A DNA stretch of 32,977 nt, from the NCBI RefSeq assembly GCF_001194135.2, contig NC_068989.1, positions 42,875,255-42,908,231 of the forward strand, written 5' to 3'. Positions 2,427-32,370 of this stretch are shown here, piece by piece (within the stretch, counting starts at the first letter, position 1; every line of letters begins with the position of its first letter). The position numbers were made by a program, and so were the translations under genes. The notes beneath the pieces are model-generated. The model saw only the letters and a list, made by a program, of their open reading frames with translations, did no database searches and was not told where the DNA came from. The DNA comes from Octopus bimaculoides. Its lineage: Eukaryota.

Positions 2427-2457
<31 letters not shown>

Positions 2458-2532
2458 TCCTATGAAGTCGTCACCCGCAAGAATATATACATACATATGT
2501 TTGTGTAGATAGATAGATAGAAAGATAGATAC

Positions 2533-2585
<53 letters not shown>

Positions 2586-2596
2586 GAGATAGATAG
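2427..2596 (+). repeat. (GT)n and (GATA)n microsatellites
   Basis: Read directly from the sequence. Confidence 0.95.
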
Positions 2597-2658
2597 AAAG
2601 ATGTGTGTTTGTGTATATGAATGTGTGTGTATATGTATGTACAAACAAACTCACACAC

Positions 2659-3060
2659 GGCGAGCTGGCAGAAACGTTAGCACGCCGGGCGAAATGCTTA
2701 GCGGTATTTCGTCTGCCGTTACGTTCTGAGTTCAAATTCCGCCGAAGTCGACTTTGCCTTTCATCCTTTCGGGGTCGATAAATTAAGTACCAGTTACGCA
2801 CTGGGGTCGATGTAATCGACTTAATCCGTTTGTTTGTCCCCTCTATGTTTAGCCTCTTGTGGGCAATACAGAAATAGGTATTTCGTCTACCGCTACGTTC
2901 TGAGTTCAAATTCCGCCGAGGTCGACTCTGCCTTTCATCCTTTCGGGGTCGATTAAATAAGTACCAGTTACGCACTGGGGTCGGTATAATCGACTTAATC
3001 CATTTGTCTGTCCTTGTGTGTCCCCTCTGTGTGTAGCCCCTTGTGGGCAGTAAAGAAATA
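2659..3060 (+). mobile_element. tRNA-derived SINE family A: full monomer followed by a second monomer lacking the A-box
   Basis: A-box-like TGGCAGAAACG, B-box GTTCAAATTCC, core GCCTTTCATCCTTTCGGGGTCGATAAATTAAGTACCAG; 2877-3060 repeats 2703-2876. Confidence 0.9.
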
Positions 3061-3340
3061 ACACACGTATACATACATACACACTGACCCATATTCACAT
3101 ATAAAATAATACTCGTGCTTTGCATACTAATGAGATGGATAATCTTTTACTAGTGCATTGAAAGAGAAGTTATCTCTCGCTGATTCATTGAGCTGTCAAT
3201 GTGTTAAAAACGCTAAGTCACATTACGACCAGTTTTTGAGAGGAATGTTTCTATTACCAGTCGTCATAGTAATATAAGTGAAGAGATGTTGATTCTTACA
3301 AAGATTATTTCAAATCTTTCAAGAATCGCTCGGGTGTTCT

Positions 3341-5649: not shown

Positions 5650-5662
5650 CCACAAATATATA

Positions 5663-5872
5663 TTAGTTTCTAATTTTGGCACAGGACTAGCAATTTCGGA
5701 GGAATGAGTAAGTTGATTTCATCTACCCCGGAGCTCAACGGATCTTATTTTATCGGCACCGAAAGGATGGGATGCCACGTTGTCCTCGGCAAAATTTGAA
5801 CTCTCAACGTAAAGACGAACGAAAAGCCGCTGAGTATTTTGCCCGGCCTGATAACGATTCTGCCGGCTCGAC
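5663..5872 (-). mobile_element. SINE family A, diverged, alternative tail type
   Basis: Reverse complement of the head (GAGCCGGCAGAATCGTTATC), B-box region and core; tail TGTGCCAAAATTAGAAAC. Confidence 0.8.
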
Positions 5873-5942: not shown

Positions 5943-6211
5943 NNNNNNNNNNNNNNNNNNNNNNNNNNNNNNNNNNNNNNNNNNNNNNNNNNNNNNNNNN
6001 NNNNNNNNNNNNNNNNNNNNNNNNNNNNNNNNNNNNNNNNNNNNNNNNNNNNNNNNNNNNNNNNNNNNNNNNNNNNNNNNNNNNNNNNNNNNNNNNNNNN
6101 NNNNNNNNNNNNNNNNNNNNNNNNNNNNNNNNNNNNNNNNNNNNNNNNNNNNNNNNNNNNNNNNNNNNNNNNNNNNNNNNNNNNNNNNNNNNNNNNNNNN
6201 NNNNNNNNNNN
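5943..6211. other. Assembly gap (others at 21482-21616, 26143-26627, 27641-27650, 28639-29024, 31082-31175)
   Basis: N runs, mostly abutting microsatellites. Confidence 0.99.
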
Positions 6212-7730: not shown

Positions 7731-7896
7731 TGTTTTAAATTTTGGCACAAGGCCAGCAAATTCAGGGATGTGGGTAAGTCGAAAGAATGAAAGGCAAAGT
7801 CGACCTGGGCAGAATTTGAACACAGAATGTAAGGACGGACAAAATGCCGCTAAGCATTTTGCTGCGTGTGCTAACTATTCCACCATCTCGCCGCCT
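7731..7896 (-). mobile_element. SINE family A, internally deleted
   Basis: Plus strand GAAAGGCAAAGTCGACCTGGGCAGAATTTGAAC...GCCGCTAAGCATTTT...CTCGCCGCC. Confidence 0.8.
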
Positions 7897-11028: not shown

Positions 11029-11274
11029 CATGTGTGTCTGCGTGTGTGTGAGTATAGTCCCAAGTTGTTTGCTCCAATTTACTATGGTTACCTATAAAGA
11101 GAGTTGTAGAATGTTGTTGGACGGACAATCATTTTTCACACATACATCTGGGAAATAAGTGATCAGAATTAATAACATGTCTTTCATCCAACGTTGCGAA
11201 GAGTAAAGGCAAGCACTTTCTTTCAAAGTAAACTACATCTGTTATGTTGAGAACCATTAGTTATTATCATATAA

Positions 11275-11402
11275 GCTACACACAGACAAACACACACAAA
11301 TATATATACACACACACACACACACGTACACACAAACATATACACATATGCATATACATGCATGCACATATGTAAATGTATATATATACATATATGTGTG
11401 TG

Positions 11403-11454
<52 letters not shown>

Positions 11455-11621
11455 TGCGTATATACATTTGTATGTATATGTATATGTATATACATGTACA
11501 TGTGTGTGTATGATAATATATGCATTTATATATACATATATATGTATATATATGCATATATATATACATATATATACATGCATATATATGCACACACATA
11601 CAGACATACACACACACATAG

Positions 11622-11658
<37 letters not shown>

Positions 11659-11664
11659 TATATA
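11275..11664 (+). repeat. Compound CA/TA/TG microsatellite tract
   Basis: Read directly; source of the spurious HT/CV/YI ORFs. Confidence 0.95.
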
Positions 11665-11892
11665 TATTCCTTTATTGCCCACAGTGGAGCTAAACATAGA
11701 GGGGACAAACAAGGACAGACAACGGGATTAATTTGATTACATCGACCCCAGTGAGTGACTGGTATTTATTTAATCGACCCCGGAAGGATGAAAAGCAAAG
11801 TCAACCCCGGCAGAATTTGAACTCAGAACGTAACGGCAGACGAAATACCAATTTCTTTATTACCCACAAGGGGCTAAACACAGATGGGACAA
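11665..11892 (-). mobile_element. SINE family A: partial tail plus A-box-less monomer (same junction as 2876/2877)
   Basis: Minus strand ...TTGTGGGTAATAAAGAAATT|GGTATTTCGTCTGCCGTTACGTTCTGAGTTCAAATT... Confidence 0.9.
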
Positions 11893-11992
11893 TACACACA
11901 TGCGGGGACAATTAACACATGATAGAATGGAACAATGAAATTAAACAATGATGATGGGACGGCCACCCCAGCCCCACCCCGGGGCGGCCGCG

Positions 11993-13625
11993 TTATTTCA
12001 ATTATTTCAACAGTTCTTAATAGTTCCTTTCACAGTCTTCGATAGTTCTTTTCAAAATTATCTCAATAATTTATCCAAAATAAAACTACTCACCATTTTA
12101 TATAATCTTTTATTTCCTCGTAGTTCACCACTGGAGCGCTGGATTCGAAATTCACCTCTGGGTATAGTTTTATCTATCAGGAGTTGATCCTTGGTGCCTC
12201 TGCACTTATGCTTCCAAAACTTCTGCTCATGTAACAGGACTCCATTTTTCTCCAGGTTCGTACATTGACTCTACGAGTATTCCAATCAATAACTTCTACA
12301 TAAGTAGCAAACAGGATATCTGTGTGTAATTGTCTGCTGTATTGCTTTTTCGATGTTTTTCAAGCATATCACTGTCCTACCCAATGTCAACCACTCTGGT
12401 GTTATTTGGTCGGCATTTAACAAGGTGTTGATTTGCGCACCTATTCGTGCATGACATTCACCAAACCTTTTGATCCAGTAGCCTTGAACTCCTGGTCCTG
12501 GGGGCCTTCGGTTGCCCATTTTTTTGCTGATTTCCTTTACTTCCCTAACTGAAATGACTAGTTCTGCCTGTTTTGGACAGACTAGTGTTTATTTCAGTTC
12601 TTGCAGCCATTCAACATCCTTTTTGTACTCCTTGTCTTTGCTTCAAATGTCACTCCAAAACCTTTGACGTTCAATGTTAACTGATATCATCTTTTCATCT
12701 GTACACTCTCTATTTATTTCTTTATAGAATCTCTTTCTGATCTACTCTGAATAACCTATTCTGGTGGTAACCCTTCATTCTTTGGTCGTATCTTACCATC
12801 TTTGCTTTCTTTGAAACGAGGCGCTGTTTCAGTTCCTCCATTACAAATTTCAGGCCCTTTCTTTCACCATTATACATCCTTTTCAGCGCCTTGTATTTTC
12901 GTTAGCTTTTAAGCTCTTCTTTCTCTTTTCGGTCTAACACAGAGATTTCCTTCGCGAGCATATCTAACCGTGCCTAGATTCTTCTTTTGCACCATACATC
13001 TTTTCTTTTGTCACTCCCATTATGTTTCTTTTTCTTGACATCAACACCCACGTTTTCTCCTACAACAATAGTTGCTGCTTTGATCAAATTATTTGTTTCT
13101 GTGATGTTGTTTGTTCTGATTTATTTCAGAATTTCATTGACATTTTTCGTTATTTTGTTTCAATTTCCATCGATCAACCTTTTTAAGGTTGCAAATAATG
13201 TCGCTATTGTTCTCCTGTAATCTTACCTTTATTCTGTTGTACATTTTATTTTTTTCATCTGTTATGTCGCTATTAGTTTTATTGTCTTCTTTTAGATCAT
13301 CTATATGTCTCACATCAAGTAAGCTACCACTGCTCCTTTCCTGTACCATGAGATTACTCTTATTAGTAAGAACTGCATTTTCGTTCTTATCTCTTCTGTT
13401 ATTGTCCATGACCCGTCTTTTGATAGCTTCGAGCTCTACTTCTGTGAACCAACAATTTTTTCTTATTTCTCTAGCTTGATCACATAGTCTCTGTTCCGTG
13501 AGTTGAAACATTCCCTTTGCTCTCCAATGATCATAATACGTTGTCGGTAACCCCTAATTTTAGCACCATTTTCATCTAGCGGGTTGCTCAGGTAGTAACA
13601 CGAAGAAATGTACAGTTCAATGTTC
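11993..13625 (-). mobile_element. R4/Dong-clade non-LTR retrotransposon, 5' half (ORF N-terminus to early RT), degenerate
   Basis: CYYLSNP...RGYRQRI; EQRLCDQAREIRKN; PGPGVQGYWIK; WLTLGRTVICLK; KCRGTKDQLLIDKT. Confidence 0.9.
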
Positions 13626-16610: not shown

Positions 16611-17256
16611 TTTTCAGAAGATCTACAAACGAACTTCTATATCAGTATCTATCATGTGATTAGAAGTAATTAACCTGGACTAATACGAACTTTTAAGTTT
16701 TTGTATCACTAATAAACTTATCTGCTCAGGTTCCTTCATATCTAAATTCATTTATGTATAACAGAATATCCTATGGATTTGAAAATATCATCAAGTCGAT
16801 CAGAATGAAAGTGAGAATGGAGAATTTAAATATTTTTCATTTATGTGTGTAATGACACCAGAGTTATCATTTAAGACTGTGTGTATAGAAATTCCTTTTC
16901 TCTATTCTTTTTCTACATAGTAAGTAAGATATTCCATATAAGACATTGATAATATCTATGAACATGTATCCTTTATTCCTGTCTGTGCGTGTGTCAGCAT
17001 ATGTGTGCGTGTGAACACAGAATTCTGTAGTAACTGACACCTGATTCCTGTACTGAGAGGATCTGGAGGACTGCTATAATTTGGCAGATATTTCGAAGTG
17101 ATATATCTACAGACATATGTCAGCAATTTTTTTTATCGAAATTGCTGATGGAATAGATATGTCACAAAAACAATAAAAACATTATCGAAAAACAGTTATA
17201 AAATCATTTTGTCGCGATAGAAACTCTTAACAAGTCAATAATTTATTATATTAGAG

Positions 17257-17470
17257 CTGCGAGCTGGCAGAATCGTTAGCACACCGGGCAAAATGCTTAA
17301 CGACATCTCTTCCGTCTTTACGTTCTGAGTTCAAATTCTGCCAAGATTGACTTTGTCTTTCATCCCATTCGTGGTAGGTAAAGTAAGTACCTGTTAAACA
17401 ATGGGGCCGATGTAATCGACTTATCCCTCCTTCTAAATTGTTAGCCTTGTGCCAAAATTGGAAACAAATA
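17257..17470 (+). mobile_element. SINE family A, full length
   Basis: GCGAGCTGGCAGAATCGTTAGC...GAGTTCAAATTCTGCC...GATGTAATCGACTTA...CCTTGTGCCAAAATTGGAAAC. Confidence 0.9.
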
Positions 17471-18423: not shown

Positions 18424-18590
18424 TTTCAAAATTTAGTACAAGTCCAGCAATTTTAATTCGAAGGCTTTTGTCAATTACATCGATACCAGCACTTAACTGG
18501 TACTTTAATTTATCGCCCCGAAAAGATGAAATTGACTTCGGCATTATTTGAACTCAGAACACAACGAGCCAGTATAAATACGGCAAACGC
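18424..18590 (-). mobile_element. SINE family A, degenerate
   Basis: TACATCGATACCAGCAC...CTGGTACTT...TTTATCGCCCCGAAAAGATG...TTTGAACTCAGAAC. Confidence 0.7.
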
Positions 18591-19053
18591 ATTTTAATTA
18601 ACATTTTATTCTCCCAGTTCACTGTTCCACATCACCTTTCACTGGGCTTTAAATAGTAATTACTAATTTATTTTCCCAATTTCTCATTCATTCAATCTAT
18701 AATGAATTCAAACGCCCCTTCGTCCATTCGTCCATTCGCCCATTCGCCCGTTAAATTGTTCATCTGTTCATTCAGTCTTACGTTTTATTATTTGTTCAGT
18801 CCATCATTCGATTATCTTATCCGTTCTATCGTTCATAACCCATTTCGTTCTCCTTTTATTTATTATAACATTTAATTTACTGTCTCTCTCTTTCAATCTT
18901 CATCTTCCATGCATTTTCATCTATTCGGCAGTTCGTTCAGCACAAGCCATCCATTCGTTGTTTTGGTTCGGGTTTAAGCTTCATTACAAATTATGCCTTT
19001 AGACTTACAAACAATTTGCAGCACCCGGGTACTATTGAGTTGATACGAGAACA

Positions 19054-21384: not shown

Positions 21385-21616
21385 CAGATAGATAGATAGA
21401 TAGATTGATACAGAGGATAACTATAATCCTGGCTATCACCTCATCCTCTCTTTTCCTCGTTTAAATTATCAATTTTACAAANNNNNNNNNNNNNNNNNNN
21501 NNNNNNNNNNNNNNNNNNNNNNNNNNNNNNNNNNNNNNNNNNNNNNNNNNNNNNNNNNNNNNNNNNNNNNNNNNNNNNNNNNNNNNNNNNNNNNNNNNNN
21601 NNNNNNNNNNNNNNNN

Positions 21617-21681: not shown

Positions 21682-22655
21682 CAGAGTGCCACAAAAATAT
21701 GTATACATACATTGAATGATTATAAAGTCAGTGTTTATTAAAATACACTTTATTTTCGAAATTTAAGAGAATCTACACACTGAGTTTAATTTTGTTATGA
21801 ACTGCTTTTTTCAAATCGATGAATGTTCTGCCCCGGCCACCACAGATAACTCGAAGCAATGGGATCGAAAATATCACGTACCATTTTTTAAAGTATTTGT
21901 GGGCATTCTCGTTCAATGGCTGTCCTCAATTCGTCGACTTTTGCCGTTTTATACGATAAATTTTATATTTTACGTATCTTTATTCAAATGTCTTGTAATG
22001 TGTGGTTCAATAAACATGTAATATATTCTTTTCTATTCTAGGCACAACGCCCGAAATTTTAGGGGAGGGAGCCAGTCGATTAGATCGACCTCAGTACGCA
22101 ACTGGAACTTAATTTATCGACCCCTAAAGGATGAAAGGCGAAGTCGACCTTGGTGGAACTTGAACTCAGAACGTAAAGACAGACAGACAGAATACCGCTA
22201 AGCATTTCGCTCGGCTTGCTAACGTTTCTGCCAGCTCACCGCCTTAAACATGGAATGTATTCTATTGAACCTATTCGTTCAATCCACTTGTTTAACAAAA
22301 TCTCATCAAGTTCTTTCAAGTCATTGGTATGACAGTTGCCGTAATTAGTGCAGGTAAACAGAGCCGGTCACAGTACTGTCAAAAAGAACTGACAATTTAT
22401 TCATTTTGATGATAAACTGCACCGTACTCTAACTACGAGTAAATGTTCCTCCATAATATGCGGCTTCTCAGGTCCTCCGTAGATGCAAGGTTAACGATTA
22501 ATTCATCCATTTAATTTAAATGTAATCTCATTACATCAAACAATCTTTGTTGGGAAGTGTTCAGCTTCATCACATCGTGTCAGTACTAGTCGCAGAGATC
22601 CATTCTTCGGTCCAGATCCTCTTCATTGAAAGCATGCAATAGCCTTGAAATTAAT
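21682..22655 (-). mobile_element. Tc1/mariner-superfamily remnant split by a SINE
   Basis: TA|CAGAGTGCCACAAAAATATGTATACA terminus; LLHAFNEEDLDRRMDLC, LDEILLNKWIERIGSIEY, DELRTAIEREC..MVRD; the frame continues across the SINE TSD. Confidence 0.8.
22031..22243 (-). mobile_element. SINE family A, full length, inserted in a Tc1-like element with a 19-bp target-site duplication
   Basis: Head, B-box and core intact; flanks TAAACATGTAATATATTCT (22011-22029) and TAAACATGGAATGTATTCT (22245-22263). Confidence 0.9.
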
Positions 22656-25279: not shown

Positions 25280-26627
25280 TATTTATATGGATTATATACA
25301 CTCTATTCACTAATTTTTCTACACGCTAGGCCACTGGTACGAAAAATTTCTAAAATGTTTCTTACCCTGATATTATTAATTATTCATAATACATACTTAT
25401 ATATGTATATAGATATGCATATATGGGTACAGAACGTCACAAAAAGTAAACAACATGAAATACGAAAATATATTTGGGTATGCAAACAACGAGAGAAACA
25501 AATGGAAAACAAGACAAGTAACATAAATTACGACCCTTCATCAGTTGTCGGCTGTCCTTCTACTCCTTATTTCGAGCATTGAACGACAATATAAGATTTG
25601 AAGGCAGTTGCTTCCGCGAACCAAAATAGAATTTGGGATTTACGGCGGGTCAAAGTTGGTAACAAAAATGGGACAGTGGAGACATACAAGGAAAACGAAC
25701 GAAATAAAACATGGAGGGTCGATAGACCAGAGAAGGTAAAGTAGTGAACGCTGGAGAAATATTGTCTTTCACAAGAGAAAAGATAGAAGAAGAGAGAGAT
25801 AAGAATACGCGCAGTCTGTACGACAGCACTGAAGGAGAAGAAAGATGATTACGTGAGGAAAAGAAAGACGCATGATGGTCACGTGTGAGCAACGAGAGAG
25901 AGAGAGAGAGAGTAAAGGAAGAAGAGGGAAAGAGAGACAGATAGAAAACGGTGAAGGGGAGAAAAAAGAATTAGAGAAGGGATGAGAGGGAAAACGAAAT
26001 GAAAAGAGAGAGAGAGGATGAGAGAGACAGAGAGAACAGTAAAGGGTAGAGTCGCATAAATATATTAAGATAAACTTACTTGGAAATGGATGCGTGACGT
26101 TTAATCAAATAATAATATAAATAATATATATATATATATATANNNNNNNNNNNNNNNNNNNNNNNNNNNNNNNNNNNNNNNNNNNNNNNNNNNNNNNNNN
26201 NNNNNNNNNNNNNNNNNNNNNNNNNNNNNNNNNNNNNNNNNNNNNNNNNNNNNNNNNNNNNNNNNNNNNNNNNNNNNNNNNNNNNNNNNNNNNNNNNNNN
26301 NNNNNNNNNNNNNNNNNNNNNNNNNNNNNNNNNNNNNNNNNNNNNNNNNNNNNNNNNNNNNNNNNNNNNNNNNNNNNNNNNNNNNNNNNNNNNNNNNNNN
26401 NNNNNNNNNNNNNNNNNNNNNNNNNNNNNNNNNNNNNNNNNNNNNNNNNNNNNNNNNNNNNNNNNNNNNNNNNNNNNNNNNNNNNNNNNNNNNNNNNNNN
26501 NNNNNNNNNNNNNNNNNNNNNNNNNNNNNNNNNNNNNNNNNNNNNNNNNNNNNNNNNNNNNNNNNNNNNNNNNNNNNNNNNNNNNNNNNNNNNNNNNNNN
26601 NNNNNNNNNNNNNNNNNNNNNNNNNNN

Positions 26628-27606: not shown

Positions 27607-27650
27607 CGTCACGGGACATATATATATATATATATATGTGNNNNNNNNNN

Positions 27651-28401: not shown

Positions 28402-30559
28402 GGGAGAGAGAACATTGCAAACAATGAATGAAATAAATATGAAATGAAAAAATCGTTTAAATAAAAGGTGTACACGCCCCAAATTTGTTGCCTCATAACA
28501 TCCAGAAAATGGATACTTTTTAGCAAAATGTTCTACAAATACCGCTTGTGGATTCAGAATATATAGGGATTTATGGGAAAAAATCTTTCCGAGGAGATGG
28601 AGAGAAAAGTTTTAGAAAATTCACACGACCTGACTTTTNNNNNNNNNNNNNNNNNNNNNNNNNNNNNNNNNNNNNNNNNNNNNNNNNNNNNNNNNNNNNN
28701 NNNNNNNNNNNNNNNNNNNNNNNNNNNNNNNNNNNNNNNNNNNNNNNNNNNNNNNNNNNNNNNNNNNNNNNNNNNNNNNNNNNNNNNNNNNNNNNNNNNN
28801 NNNNNNNNNNNNNNNNNNNNNNNNNNNNNNNNNNNNNNNNNNNNNNNNNNNNNNNNNNNNNNNNNNNNNNNNNNNNNNNNNNNNNNNNNNNNNNNNNNNN
28901 NNNNNNNNNNNNNNNNNNNNNNNNNNNNNNNNNNNNNNNNNNNNNNNNNNNNNNNNNNNNNNNNNNNNNNNNNNNNNNNNNNNNNNNNNNNNNNNNNNNN
29001 NNNNNNNNNNNNNNNNNNNNNNNNCTTCAAAATATCATGGGAACAGCATTTTCGGTAAATAATATAAAGAAAAGAGTGTTAATATTTTCAGAGGGAAAAG
29101 TGGGTGATTTAAAGGTGATCTGGATGTTGTTTCTTTATCACTCTCGCATGTATTGGTGTTTTTCAATACTTTCCCCCATAAATACATTTATATGCTATAA
29201 AAACGAAAATTTAAGAAATGAATTTTTTGCAACACCACTCCCTGTCCCCGACGATTTCTGTTTAGATGTAACAATATTGGAGAGCCTGAGAAGGTCATTG
29301 CTGGCATTTATCCACAGTGATTTTTAAAAATTACGTAGATGTACTTGCATAGCAAGTGACTTGATCTGAGATCATATGCTGAAACAAAAGCAATTACAGC
29401 ATGAGCTAGTTTCACTTCAACATTTAAATTTCATTTGTTTCAAAATATTTTCGTTGCTTTGAAACCACGATCTGTTGACTGATAAAACTTCACAAAAGTG
29501 ATGCGGCACGATTTATCGTCAGTGAACAAGTCGTGGTTTCAAAGCGACGAAAGTACTTTGACAGAAATGAAATTTAAATGTTGATGTGAAACTGTTTTTG
29601 TGTGTTCTTGAATGACTTACAAACATCTTTCACGCAGTAATTGTTGTTGATTTTAAAAAAGAGTTATGTAAAGGATAATTCATTTTAATAGCATACACTT
29701 CGGTTAGAAAATGTTTTTTTCTTACACACACACACACAGAGTTTGATTCAGGTAGGAGTAAAAATTTAGATTACAATTTATTTTGTTGTTTTTCTTCGAC
29801 CAATGGACCACGCGTGTTACTTCGGCATCATAATTCCATAAAATGTGTTTAATGGAGGAAAAATATTGAAAAAGATCAATACATGTGAGAGTGAAAAAAA
29901 GAGTGGGTGGTTTGGGTTGTATTAGAAACAACACCGAAATCTCCCTTGAATTGTTCACCTTTTCCTCTGGAAATATTTACAATTTGCTTTATCCTTATTT
30001 TTTGTTTTTTTACCGAAAAGGCTCCTCCATTGATTTTTAAGTTAATAATCAAAATGGCAAAAATCAGTCCGGATAGTAATTATTGCTAGGCTTTATTGCG
30101 TTCAGAACAGCCATAACAACAAAATCATTAAAAAAATTTTTAACAAAGATCATACGAGTATTTAAAAAAATTTTCATTCAATAAATAATGTTTTTACGCT
30201 ACGTATACATTAATAGAATAAACTGTCGATTTCCAAATAGGGAATTAAAACTTGAAATGAAAACAGTAAAAGAGAAAGTGAGAGACTTTGCAAATGACAA
30301 CAGAATACGCCGCAATGAATGCAATAAATATTTAAAATTGTGACAAATTAGACGCAGTCAATGCAATGGGTATTTAAATTTGCGAGAAAATGGAGTAAAA
30401 AATTCAATAAACTTAAGAAATCGAAATTATAAGAAATTTCTTAGAACGTGAATTAATAAAATATTTCCAGACGACCAACCCTTTAATGAATAACTTTCTT
30501 TTAGCACTTTTAATAATTGCTAAATACCCAATGAATAAGCAACATTTTCCATTATAGTA
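28057..30559 (+). mobile_element. Tandem unit 1 of a putative non-autonomous Helitron/Helentron-like composite element
   Basis: Starts (T)ACTAGCAGAAAGACC plus a short hairpin; internal (GA)n; colinear with 30560-32370. The duplication is certain; the family assignment is inferred. Confidence 0.6.
29407..29594. repeat. Foldback palindrome inside tandem unit 1 (counterpart at about 31445-31632)
   Basis: GTTTCACTTCAACATTTAAATTTCATTT...TTTGAAACCACGA and TCGTGGTTTCAAAG...AAATGAAATTTAAATGTTGATGTGAAAC. Confidence 0.9.
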
Positions 30560-30861: not shown

Positions 30862-32370
30862 GCGGGGAGAGAACATTGCAAACAGTGAATGAAATAAACA
30901 TGAAATGAAAAAATCGTTTAAATAAAAGGGCATTACTACAAATGTATACACACCCGGCTTTGTTGCCTCATACCATCCAGAAAAATGGATACTATTTAAC
31001 AAAATTTTCTACAAATAACGCTTAGATTAGTTTCAGAGTATACAGGGATTTATGGGAAAGAATCTTTCCGACGGGGTGGAGNNNNNNNNNNNNNNNNNNN
31101 NNNNNNNNNNNNNNNNNNNNNNNNNNNNNNNNNNNNNNNNNNNNNNNNNNNNNNNNNNNNNNNNNNNNNNNNNNNCTTTATCACTCACGCATGTATTGAT
31201 ATTTTTCTATATTTTTCCGCATAAATACTTTTATATTCTATAAAAAAAAGAACATTTGAGAGATTATGAATTTTTTGCAACCCTTCTCCCTACCCCCGAT
31301 TGTTTCTGTTTAGAAATTAAATACTAGAGAGTCTGAGAAGATCATTGCTGAAATTTATCCACAGTGATTTTAAAAAATTACGGAGATGTACTTGCATAGC
31401 AAGTACTTGATCTGAGATCGTGTGCTGAAACAAAAACAATTGCAGCGTGGAAGATGTTTGTAAGCCATTCAAGAACACACAAAAACAGATAGTTTCACTT
31501 CAACAATTAAATTTCATTTGTGTCAAAATATTTTCGCCGCTTTGAAACCGGGACCTGTTCACTGACAAAACTTCATGATTGTGATGCAGTACGAATTATT
31601 GTCAGTGAACAGGTCGTGGTTTCAAAGCGACGGTGAGGGTAAAAATTTAGATCGCAATTTATTTTGCTGTTTTTCTTCGACCAATGGACCACGCATGTGT
31701 TACTTCGGCATCATCATTCTCTAAAATGTGTTTAATGGGAGAAAAATATAGAAAAACATCAATACATGTGAGGGTGAAAAGGGAGGGTGGTTTGGGTTAA
31801 GCTAGAAACAACAGCGAAACGTCCCTTGAATTGTTCACCATTTCTTCTGAAAATATTTACAATTTTTTTTTTTTTTTTTTTACCAAAAGGGTTCCTCCCA
31901 TGGTTTTTAGTTATAAATGGAAATGTCCAAAATCAGTCCGGATAGTTATTATTGTAATGCTTATAGCTTTCCAAACAGCCATAACAACAAAATCACTTTA
32001 AAATTGTTTTACAAAAATTATACGGGTATTTTAATAAATTTTCATTCAATAAATAATGCTTTTACATTACGTTTACATTAAAAGAATGAACTGTCGGTTT
32101 TCCAAATAGTGAATTAAAACTTAAAATGAACATTAAAAGAGAAAGTGGGACATTGCAAATAAAAATTGAATACTCTGCAGTGAATGCAATGCATATGTAA
32201 ATTTGTGAAGAATTGACGCAATGCATATTTAGATATGCGAGAAGTTGGAGTTAAAAGCATTCAACTGAAGTAATCGAAATTATAAGATATTTCTGAGAAC
32301 ATGAATTGCTTTCTTTTAGTAGTTTTAGTAATTGTCACATACCTAATTGATAAGCAGTTTTCTTCAATAT
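30560..32370 (+). mobile_element. Tandem unit 2, head-to-tail with unit 1
   Basis: TCTAGCAGAAAGACCGCCCTCCGGATGGT start and the same block order to about 32370. Confidence 0.6.

What the first reader, a model, noticed from the sequence alone, without database searches (positions are those of the whole stretch)
2871..2884. Recurrent, self-complementary SINE tail-to-internal junction producing concatemers
Seen: at two loci (2876/2877 plus; 11849/11850 minus) the SINE 3' tail joins the same internal base between A-box and B-box, giving monomers of about 185 bp with a B-box but no A-box. The junction is a near palindrome (GAAATA-GG-TATTTC; GAAATT-GG-TATTTC), so the tail end is complementary to the head sequence it joins. 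Only the GTCCCCTC...TTGTGGG tail variant shows this. Inference: 3'-end pairing could promote RNA circularisation or RT template jumping and retrozyme-like concatemer insertion without a ribozyme. A single dimeric master SINE is the simpler alternative.
Basis: partly seen in the sequence, partly recalled or inferred. Interest (0 to 1): 0.7.

Follow-up and report, generated by a model that had tools for sequence, protein, structure and literature searches.

The report
Headless octopus SINEs stacked on tails
At two places in this octopus DNA a copy of a common short retroposon that has lost its first 44 bases is joined, at exactly the same base, to the 3' tail of another retroposon; this is best read as a hot spot within the ordinary habit of these elements of landing on each other's tails, not as a new circular-RNA way of copying.

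Summary
The sequence observation is real. At 2876/2877 (+) and 11850/11849 (-), an intact LINE-type 3' tail (...TTGTGGGCAATAAAGAAATA) is followed without spacer by a 184-185 bp SINE unit. Both units start at the same base, nt 45 (GGTATTTCG). The repeat is an octopus tRNA-related CORE-type SINE.

- **No single dimeric master.** The upstream partner is a full SINE of another subfamily at locus A. At locus D it is a 142-bp non-SINE fragment carrying the same tail, next to a decayed LINE reverse-transcriptase remnant. CpG decay shows the two loci differ in age.
- **No circular or rolling-circle RNA.** Units within a pair come from different templates. There is no permutation, no array longer than two, and no ribozyme.
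- **Stacking is general.** In 110 kb of octopus DNA, 8 of 33 SINE pieces sit head-to-tail on another element's tail (0.07 expected for the 7 in window plus L002). Both tail types, several 5' start points and clearly different ages are involved.
- **Why nt 45.** It is the first base of the 3' arm of the SINE's own 13-bp hairpin. It is also one of only 6 of 217 possible start points that can pair with the tail end.

Best reading: repeated LINE-mediated tail stacking with a structure-determined 5' end. A one-step template jump is not excluded. No genome-wide count was possible.

The parts
2659..2876 (+). A1: full-length SINE (tRNA-related head, CORE-like body, short version of the GTCCCC...TTGTGGGCAATACAGAAATA tail)
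   Evidence: All 12 consensus CpGs are retained and there are 5 substitutions in 174 nt against the 5-copy consensus.
2686..2715 (+). Native 13-bp hairpin of the SINE head (nt 28-40 paired with nt 45-57, loop UAGC)
   Evidence: -16 kcal/mol, z -3.15; paired in 86% of cells across 15 copies against 37-58% for slid controls, with no covariation beyond shuffles.
2871..2884 (+). Junction A: tail end GAAATA | GGTATTTC, the start of the 3' arm of the hairpin in the next unit
   Evidence: Weak fold: -4.4 kcal/mol, z -1.4.
2877..3060 (+). A2: 184-bp SINE unit lacking nt 1-44. Subfamily GATTAAATAAG with the long tail.
   Evidence: 11 of 12 CpGs retained.
2902..2914 (+). B-box-like GAGTTCAAATTCC retained in A2
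   Evidence: sequence read directly.
11850..11991 (-). D1: non-SINE fragment ending in the same LINE-type tail (...TTGTGGGTAATAAAGAAATT). Probably the 3' end of the partner LINE.
   Evidence: Only the last 42-75 bp match the SINE tail. A frame open since window ~12025 (minus strand), in the last part of the RT remnant, runs on through D1 to a stop in the tail.
11842..11855 (-). Junction D: GAAATT | GGTATTTC
   Evidence: Weak fold: -4.2 kcal/mol, z -0.8.
11665..11849 (-). D2: 185-bp SINE unit starting at the same base (nt 45). Same subfamily as A2 but older.
   Evidence: 7 of 12 CpGs retained and 15 substitutions in 184 nt.
12000..13550 (-). Decayed LINE remnant (N-terminal half of a reverse transcriptase, many frameshifts) directly upstream of D1
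   Evidence: Relatives found carry Pfam PF00078 (RVT_1).
22022..22243 (-). Context: full-length SINE of the major family with the other tail (...TTGTGCCTAGAATAGAAAAGAATATA). Further copies lie at 5659-5870(-), 7780-7895(-), 17256-17470(+) and 18470-18594(-).

Best explanation
These are ordinary LINE-driven retroposition products. The two events are independent. In each, a copy of an octopus CORE-type SINE missing its first 44 nt was placed directly onto the intact 3' tail of an element already in the genome. That element is a young SINE at locus A and a LINE 3'-end fragment at locus D.

Proposed steps:
1. The partner LINE's machinery prefers to nick and prime in sequence that resembles the 3' end of its own RNA. 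Tails of earlier copies are therefore preferred landing sites, and elements pile up head-to-tail.
2. Reverse transcription of the incoming SINE RNA runs from its tail through the 3' arm of the SINE's stable 13-bp hairpin.
3. It ends at the hairpin apex (nt 45), or the RNA is cut there.
4. The cDNA end is joined without microhomology to the old tail.

Shown: the anatomy, the recurrence, the different partners and ages, the general stacking, and the position of nt 45 at the loop/3'-arm boundary.

Inferred: tail-directed priming, termination at the apex, and that the two units of each pair arrived in separate events.
For: 1. Stacking is a general and highly non-random habit. Of 33 SINE pieces in window + L002 + L003, 8 lie within 15 bp downstream of another element's tail on the same strand. 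For window + L002 the count is 7 against 0.067 expected, and none of 5000 random placements reached 3.
2. One stack of three (L002 66630-65989) has units at 74%, 84% and 96% identity to the consensus, getting younger downstream. That stack must be sequential.
3. Start points vary, so nt 45 is one hot spot among several:
   - nt 1 (L002 66207 and 4218).
   - about nt 9 (L002 4431).
   - nt 17-18, with AGAA microhomology (L002 69654; proteins P0025, P0028, P0040).
   - nt 45 (A2, D2; possibly P0036 and P0037).
   - about nt 47-52 (P0027).
   - about nt 121, with ATAAAT microhomology (L003).
   Sources.
4. The partners at A and D differ in kind, and the loci differ in age: CpG retention is 12/12 and 11/12 at A against 7/12 in D2.
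5. nt 45 is the first base of the 3' arm of a hairpin at -16 kcal/mol, z -3.15.
6. Both tail types fold into the same stem-loop, with loop CUUGU and G/C-swapped arms. That fits a LINE RT recognition hairpin.
7. Target-site duplications flank monomers of both families. An example is ATAAGGCCTA at the L002 monomer.
Against: - A1 and A2 look equally young, which fits a single event at least as well as two.
- Both nt-45 junctions keep the upstream tail complete to its last base, with no spacer and no microhomology. The clearly microhomology-driven junctions cut into the tail.
- No nt-45 unit was found away from a tail, although a pure RT stop predicts such copies. Only 6 tail-variant elements could be examined.
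- An RT has no obvious reason to stop after it has already unwound the stem.
- Target-site duplications cannot separate the models, because a duplicated tail end looks like the tail itself.
- The hairpin shows no covariation beyond shuffles.
Confidence: 0.45

Rival explanations
1. One-step chimeric retrocopy. During a single target-primed reverse transcription, the LINE RT copies a SINE RNA up to the hairpin apex (nt 45). It then re-initiates on the tail of a second RNA that it recognises: a SINE RNA at locus A, a LINE RNA at locus D. The acceptor's terminal GAAAUA, which mimics the 5' arm of the hairpin, may pair with the donor's UAUUUC and hold the two RNAs together.
For: - The upstream tail is complete to its last base, with no spacer, at both loci.
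- A1 and A2 are equally young.
- Only 6 of 217 possible start points allow 5 nt or more of pairing with the tail end. A, D and probably P0027 fall among them.
- The partner is always an element with a tail the RT can recognise.
- Template-switch chimeras of LINE RTs are documented (PMC2104539, PMC4476161, PMC5729268).
Against: - No direct evidence was found. No unambiguous single target-site duplication spans a pair: ACACAC at A is low-complexity and none is visible at D.
- The pairing is weak.
- The pairing is confounded with the hairpin-apex position.
- At least one stack in the same genome is clearly sequential.
- The cDNA end at nt 45 has no complementarity to the acceptor's 3' end.
Confidence: 0.3
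2. Secondary loss of the head. A full-length SINE first stacked on the tail (tail|GGCGGCGAG...), as seen elsewhere. Nt 1-44 were then deleted by slippage between the GG at the SINE's 5' end and the GG at nt 45-46. Pairing of GAAATA with TATTTC at the base of the lost segment helped. This could happen at DNA replication or during reverse transcription of a read-through dimer RNA.
For: - Full-length units abutting tails exist (L002 66208/66207).
- The junction keeps exactly one GG between inverted repeats.
- This would explain the exact recurrence and the restriction to the tail that ends in GAAATA.
- A P0027-type junction (GAAATATTTC) fits slippage on TA.
Against: A 6-bp A/T stem closing a loop of about 48 nt is not stable, and a 2-nt direct repeat is minimal. 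No intermediate was seen, meaning a full-length unit on a variant tail at the DNA level.
Confidence: 0.1
3. A single dimeric or head-less master element copied as a unit.
For: A2 and D2 have the same start base and belong to the same subfamily.
Against: - The left partner is a SINE at A and a non-SINE LINE-like fragment at D.
- A2 and D2 share no private substitution.
- A full-length monomer of the same subfamily exists.
- The short unit lacks the A-box region needed for its own Pol III transcription.
Confidence: 0.07
4. Circular SINE RNA copied by rolling-circle reverse transcription (retrozyme-like concatemers).
For: Only the apparent self-complementarity of the junction.
Against: - Units of a pair derive from different templates.
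- A1 carries the head that a circle would lack.
- No permuted copy and no array longer than 2 units was seen.
- No Rfam family reaches its gathering score anywhere in the window.
- The junction fold is not significant.
Confidence: 0.03
5. Assembly artefact of a gapped short-read assembly.
For: The window has six N gaps. In L002 a 10-N gap falsely duplicates part of a SINE.
Against: - There is no gap at either junction.
- The two sides share no k-mer that could cause a false join.
- The units are 9-13% diverged from each other.
- The junction occurs at two loci.
- Similar tail-to-SINE joins appear in independent Logan contigs.
Confidence: 0.03

Closest known systems
Octopus tRNA-derived CORE-SINEs (OR1/OR2 of Ohshima and Okada 1994, as cited in PMC4824008 and PMC4758252)
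   Same: The host is an octopus; the best protein hits are from Octopus bimaculoides. The element has a tRNA-related head with box-like motifs, a central part that resembles the CORE domain, and a LINE-type tail.
   Different: Identity with OR1 or OR2 could not be tested because no reference sequence was available. The head is not recognised as a tRNA by ARAGORN or Rfam. The stacked head-less units are not described in the papers searched.
Chimeric retrocopies made by LINE RT template switching (U6/L1 and the Magnaporthe chimeras; PMC4476161, PMC2104539)
   Same: A 5' part that runs to the exact 3' end of one RNA is fused in the same orientation to a 5'-truncated copy of another retroposon.
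   Different: In those chimeras the switch point is usually variable and a single target-site duplication spans the chimera. Here the switch point recurs at one base, and a spanning duplication could not be shown.
Tail-directed insertion of non-LTR retroposons. Examples are Alu landing in A-rich tails of older Alus (own knowledge) and the dependence of priming on 3' microsatellite-like repeats in RTE-related SINEs (PMC6007223).
   Same: New copies land at or in the 3' ends of older copies, giving head-to-tail stacks of different ages.
   Different: The tail here is not poly(A). It is a stem-loop followed by AATAAAGAAATA, and one 5' end recurs at a hairpin apex.
Retrozymes (own knowledge)
   Same: Only the idea of multimeric copies of a small non-coding retroelement.
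   Different: There is no hammerhead ribozyme, no LTRs, no evidence of circular RNA, and the units are not copies of one template.
Dimeric SINE families such as Alu (PMC13023118 for a recent example)
   Same: Two SINE-like units lie in tandem.
   Different: There is no fixed left or right monomer. The left partner can be a LINE fragment.

Membership tests
tRNA-derived CORE-SINE (octopus OR-type) | tRNA-related head with Pol III A and B boxes | tested here: inconclusive
   A B-box-like GAGTTCAAATTCC and A-box-like TGGCAGAAACG / TAGCACGCCGG are read in the sequence. ARAGORN finds no tRNA and Rfam gives no tRNA match.
tRNA-derived CORE-SINE (octopus OR-type) | Conserved CORE central domain | not testable with these tools
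   The resemblance of TTTCATCCTTTCGGGGTCGATAAATTAAGTACC to the MIR/CORE consensus is recalled from memory. No Repbase, Dfam or SINEBase library was available. The papers only state that octopus OR1/OR2 are CORE-SINEs.
tRNA-derived CORE-SINE (octopus OR-type) | 3' tail shared with a partner LINE | tested here: inconclusive
   D1 is a non-SINE fragment with the same tail, next to a LINE RT remnant. No intact LINE with this tail was recovered.
tRNA-derived CORE-SINE (octopus OR-type) | Dispersed copies flanked by target-site duplications | tested here: met
   The L002 monomer has the duplication ATAAGGCCTA. About 30 copies were found in 110 kb.
Template-switch chimeric retrocopy | 5' partner complete to its 3' end, 3' partner 5'-truncated, same orientation | tested here: met
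Template-switch chimeric retrocopy | One target-site duplication flanking the whole chimera and none between the parts | tested here: inconclusive
   At locus A only ACACAC in a microsatellite context is seen. None is visible at D. A duplicated tail end cannot be told apart from the tail.
Retrozyme-like / circular-RNA concatemer | Self-cleaving ribozyme or other circularisation signal | tested here: not met
   No Rfam family reaches its gathering score anywhere in the window. Only weak chance matches appear at E up to 10 in 2640-3080.
Retrozyme-like / circular-RNA concatemer | Tandem units copied from one template, permuted ends, arrays longer than 2 | tested here: not met
   A1 and A2 differ at a site shared with other copies and by a 10-bp indel. 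D1 is not a SINE. No trimer was seen.
Dimeric SINE family | Fixed left and right monomers shared by all copies | tested here: not met
   The left partners at A and D differ in kind. A2 and D2 share no private site. The sample is only two loci.

The most novel reading that the evidence does not exclude
The terminal GAAAUA of the LINE-type tail mimics the 5' arm of the SINE's own hairpin. It pairs in trans with the 3' arm (UAUUUC) of a second SINE RNA. This steers the LINE reverse transcriptase to leave the first template at the hairpin apex and re-initiate on the paired tail. Head-less SINE units would then be inserted as ready-made concatemers in one event, a structure-guided and sequence-specific template jump.
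Probability: 0.15. Interest if true: 0.55.

Novelty: new member of a known kind. Interest (0 to 1): 0.25.

Why it matters
If the best reading holds, this is a small but tidy case of two known effects. RNA structure in a SINE can fix where 5' truncation happens. Tail-directed insertion builds tandem SINE stacks in a genome where SINEs make up more than a tenth of the DNA (PMC13282606).

It matters in practice for repeat annotation. Stacks and head-less units can be mistaken for dimeric families or for tandem repeats.

If the one-step, pairing-guided jump were true, it would provide a natural system for studying template switching by a stringent-type LINE reverse transcriptase.

Tried and rejected
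- **Exact-pattern scans** of metagenome, prokaryote-genome and viral collections with a 20-mer of the SINE gave one chance hit (L001) and nothing else.
- **Antisense dimer ORF as a protein probe.** The SINE's antisense frame is open. The search gave only 5 hits.
- **Representative search.** It gave 42 SINE-derived ORFs, all those checked being from unnamed Logan contigs. Their DNA cannot be fetched, so junction positions from them are approximate.
- **Locus look-ups.** P0005 is not on record. P0006 and P0009 are LINE relatives from non-octopus metagenomes with no SINE.
- **RNAalifold** on 15 decayed copies predicted a different, trivial helix, so the named hairpin was counted directly.
- **Other dead ends.** A fuzzy-regex scan timed out and was replaced by blastn-short. 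No held paper contains the SINE sequence or describes such dimers. The octopus genome paper is not held.
- **Microhomology at nt 45, considered and rejected.** The tail's GAAAT matches nt 33-37, which would give ...GAAAT|GCTTAGCGG. That is not what is seen.

Full report
**Observation**

On the plus strand, a complete 218-bp SINE (A1, 2659-2876) ends in ...TTGTGGGCAATACAGAAATA. It is followed without any spacer by a 184-bp unit (A2, 2877-3060) that begins GGTATTTCGTC, which is nt 45 of the SINE.

On the minus strand, a tail ending ...TTGTGGGTAATAAAGAAATT (to 11850) is followed by a 185-bp unit (D2, 11849-11665) that starts at the same base. Both short units keep the B-box-like GAGTTCAAATTCC and lack the A-box region.

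**What the repeat is**

- The window is AT-rich (36% GC), rich in microsatellites, and has six N gaps.
- It holds about ten copies of one SINE family.
- The best protein-level matches to the SINE's open antisense frame are predicted Octopus bimaculoides proteins. A 76-kb stretch of an O. bimaculoides chromosome (L002) carries about 20 more copies.
- The element has a tRNA-related head, although ARAGORN and Rfam do not recognise it as a tRNA.
- Its body resembles the CORE domain, as far as I recall that consensus. Papers list the octopus OR1/OR2 SINEs as CORE-SINEs.
- It carries one of two related tails. Both fold into the same small stem-loop with loop CUUGU and G/C-swapped arms: GCCC...GGGC against GGGC...GCCU. 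This is what one expects of an RT recognition hairpin inherited from two related partner LINEs.

**Anatomy of the junction**

In the intact SINE, nt 28-40 pair with nt 45-57 around the loop UAGC. This hairpin is 13 bp, -16 kcal/mol, z -3.15 against shuffles. Across 15 genomic copies, 86% of cells are paired, against 37-58% for slid controls. There is no covariation beyond shuffles, as expected for decaying copies.

The short units therefore start exactly at the first base of the 3' arm. The left half is the A-rich end of the tail, which happens to resemble the native 5' arm (CGAAATG). The junction itself is not a significantly stable fold: -4.4 and -4.2 kcal/mol, z -1.4 and -0.8.

Even so, of 217 possible truncation points only six (consensus 46-51) would let the tail end pair with 5 nt or more of the unit, and the junction is one of them. 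This is notable, but it is confounded with the hairpin-apex position.

**Not one dimeric master**

- D1 (11991-11850) matches the SINE only over its tail. The rest is unrelated sequence that follows a frameshifted LINE RT remnant at 12000-13550, and a frame open since ~12025 (minus strand), in the last part of that remnant, runs on through D1 to a stop in the tail.
- A1 reads GATAAATTAAG, as L003 does, where A2, D2 and the full-length L002 monomer read GATTAAATAAG. A1 also lacks 10 bp of the tail that all four others carry.
- A2 and D2 share no private substitution.
- CpG retention is 12/12 in A1, 11/12 in A2 and 7/12 in D2. The junction therefore arose at different times.

**Not circular RNA**

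- Rolling-circle copying predicts tandem units from one template with permuted ends.
- Here the units of a pair come from different templates.
- A1 has the head that a 185-nt circle would lack.
- No array exceeds two units.
- No Rfam family reaches its gathering score anywhere in the window.

**The wider pattern**

Head-to-tail stacking on tails is common in octopus DNA. Eight of 33 SINE pieces in window + L002 + L003 lie within 15 bp downstream of another element's tail. In window + L002 the count is 7 against 0.067 expected, and none of 5000 random placements reached 3.

- L002 66630-65989 is a stack of three units at 74%, 84% and 96% identity to the consensus, younger downstream. It can only be sequential insertion.
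- L002 4047-4580 is another stack of three.
- At L002 69653/69654, a major-type tail joins a unit at nt 17-18 within a shared AGAA.
- In L003, a contig from an unrelated metagenome that contains octopus DNA, a variant tail joins a major-type unit at about nt 121 within a shared ATAAAT.
- SINE-derived ORFs from Logan contigs add approximate cases:
  - P0025, P0028 and P0040 at about nt 12-18.
  - P0027 at about nt 47-52 (GAAATATTTC).
  - P0036 near nt 45.
  - P0037, ambiguous.
  - P0058, full length.
  - Sources.

So nt 45 is one of several preferred start points. The others show microhomology with the tail; nt 45 does not.

**Mechanism**

I commit to repeated LINE-mediated tail stacking with a structure-determined 5' end (0.45). 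Tails of older copies are preferred priming sites, consistent with the link between 3' repeats and priming reported for RTE-related SINEs (PMC6007223). The cDNA ends at the hairpin apex and is joined bluntly to the old tail.

The main rival (0.30) is a one-step template jump from the apex to the tail of a second RNA, as in known chimeric retrocopies (PMC2104539, PMC4476161). The equal youth of A1 and A2 and the intact, spacer-free upstream tails favour it. The proven sequential stack in the same genome and the lack of a spanning duplication do not.

Minor rivals are secondary deletion of the head from a stacked full-length unit (0.10), a dimeric master (0.07), circular RNA (0.03) and misassembly (0.03). 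Misassembly is unlikely because there is no gap and no shared k-mer at the junctions. L002 does, however, show a real gap artefact at 40785-40794.

**Limits**

Only six elements with this tail could be inspected at the DNA level.

**Verdict**

This is a real, recurrent junction, but the phenomenon is of a known kind. No held paper describes it for octopus. Interest is modest.

Noticed in passing
window 2843-2876 and 22022-22060(-); consensus tails: The two SINE tail types are homologous and fold alike. The loop CUUGU is the same, but the inner stem arms are swapped (GCCC/GGGC against GGGC/GCCU). This is four compensatory pairs between families and suggests an RT recognition hairpin of two related partner LINEs.
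   Followed up: partly
window 12000-13550 (-), running into 11991-11850: A decayed LINE (N-terminal RT half, many frameshifts) lies here. A frame open since ~12025 (minus strand), in the last part of the remnant, continues through the GC-rich start of D1 to a stop inside the tail (TAG of GTTTAGCC). The partner LINE may therefore have almost no 3' UTR. The relatives found were from non-octopus marine metagenomes.
   Followed up: partly
L002 40785-40794: A 10-N gap in the O. bimaculoides chromosome record falsely duplicates about 55 bp of a single SINE monomer. Gapped assemblies of this genome can mimic partial SINE duplications.
   Followed up: yes
L002 69677-69700: Four telomere-like TTAGGG repeats sit inside the hairpin-loop region (GCTTAGCGG) of a stacked, truncated SINE unit. 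This looks like an expansion seeded by the loop sequence.
   Followed up: no
L003 172-398(-); proteins P0002, P0042: A SINE subfamily carries a 4-nt loop deletion (GGGCGAAATAG(C/T)GG instead of GGGCGAAATGCTTAGCGG). Its internal sequence shares GAAATAG with the tail-plus-junction string.
   Followed up: partly
window 2460-3125 (-); proteins P0001, P0005, P0023: One antisense frame of the SINE is open. It forms part of a 221-codon ORF that runs across the dimer and its flanks, and it appears as exonised segments in predicted O. bimaculoides proteins (P0001, P0005). One further hit, P0023 (706 aa, source not determined), also carries it.
   Followed up: partly
window 2427-2640 and 11260-11664: Both stacked loci are embedded in long microsatellite tracts: (TG)n, (TAGA)24 and TG/TA-rich runs upstream of A, and (TA)n(TG)n directly after D2.
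   Followed up: no
window 5943-6211, 21482-21616, 26143-26627, 27641-27650, 28639-29024, 31082-31175: Six runs of N show that the window comes from a gapped scaffold assembly.
   Followed up: yes
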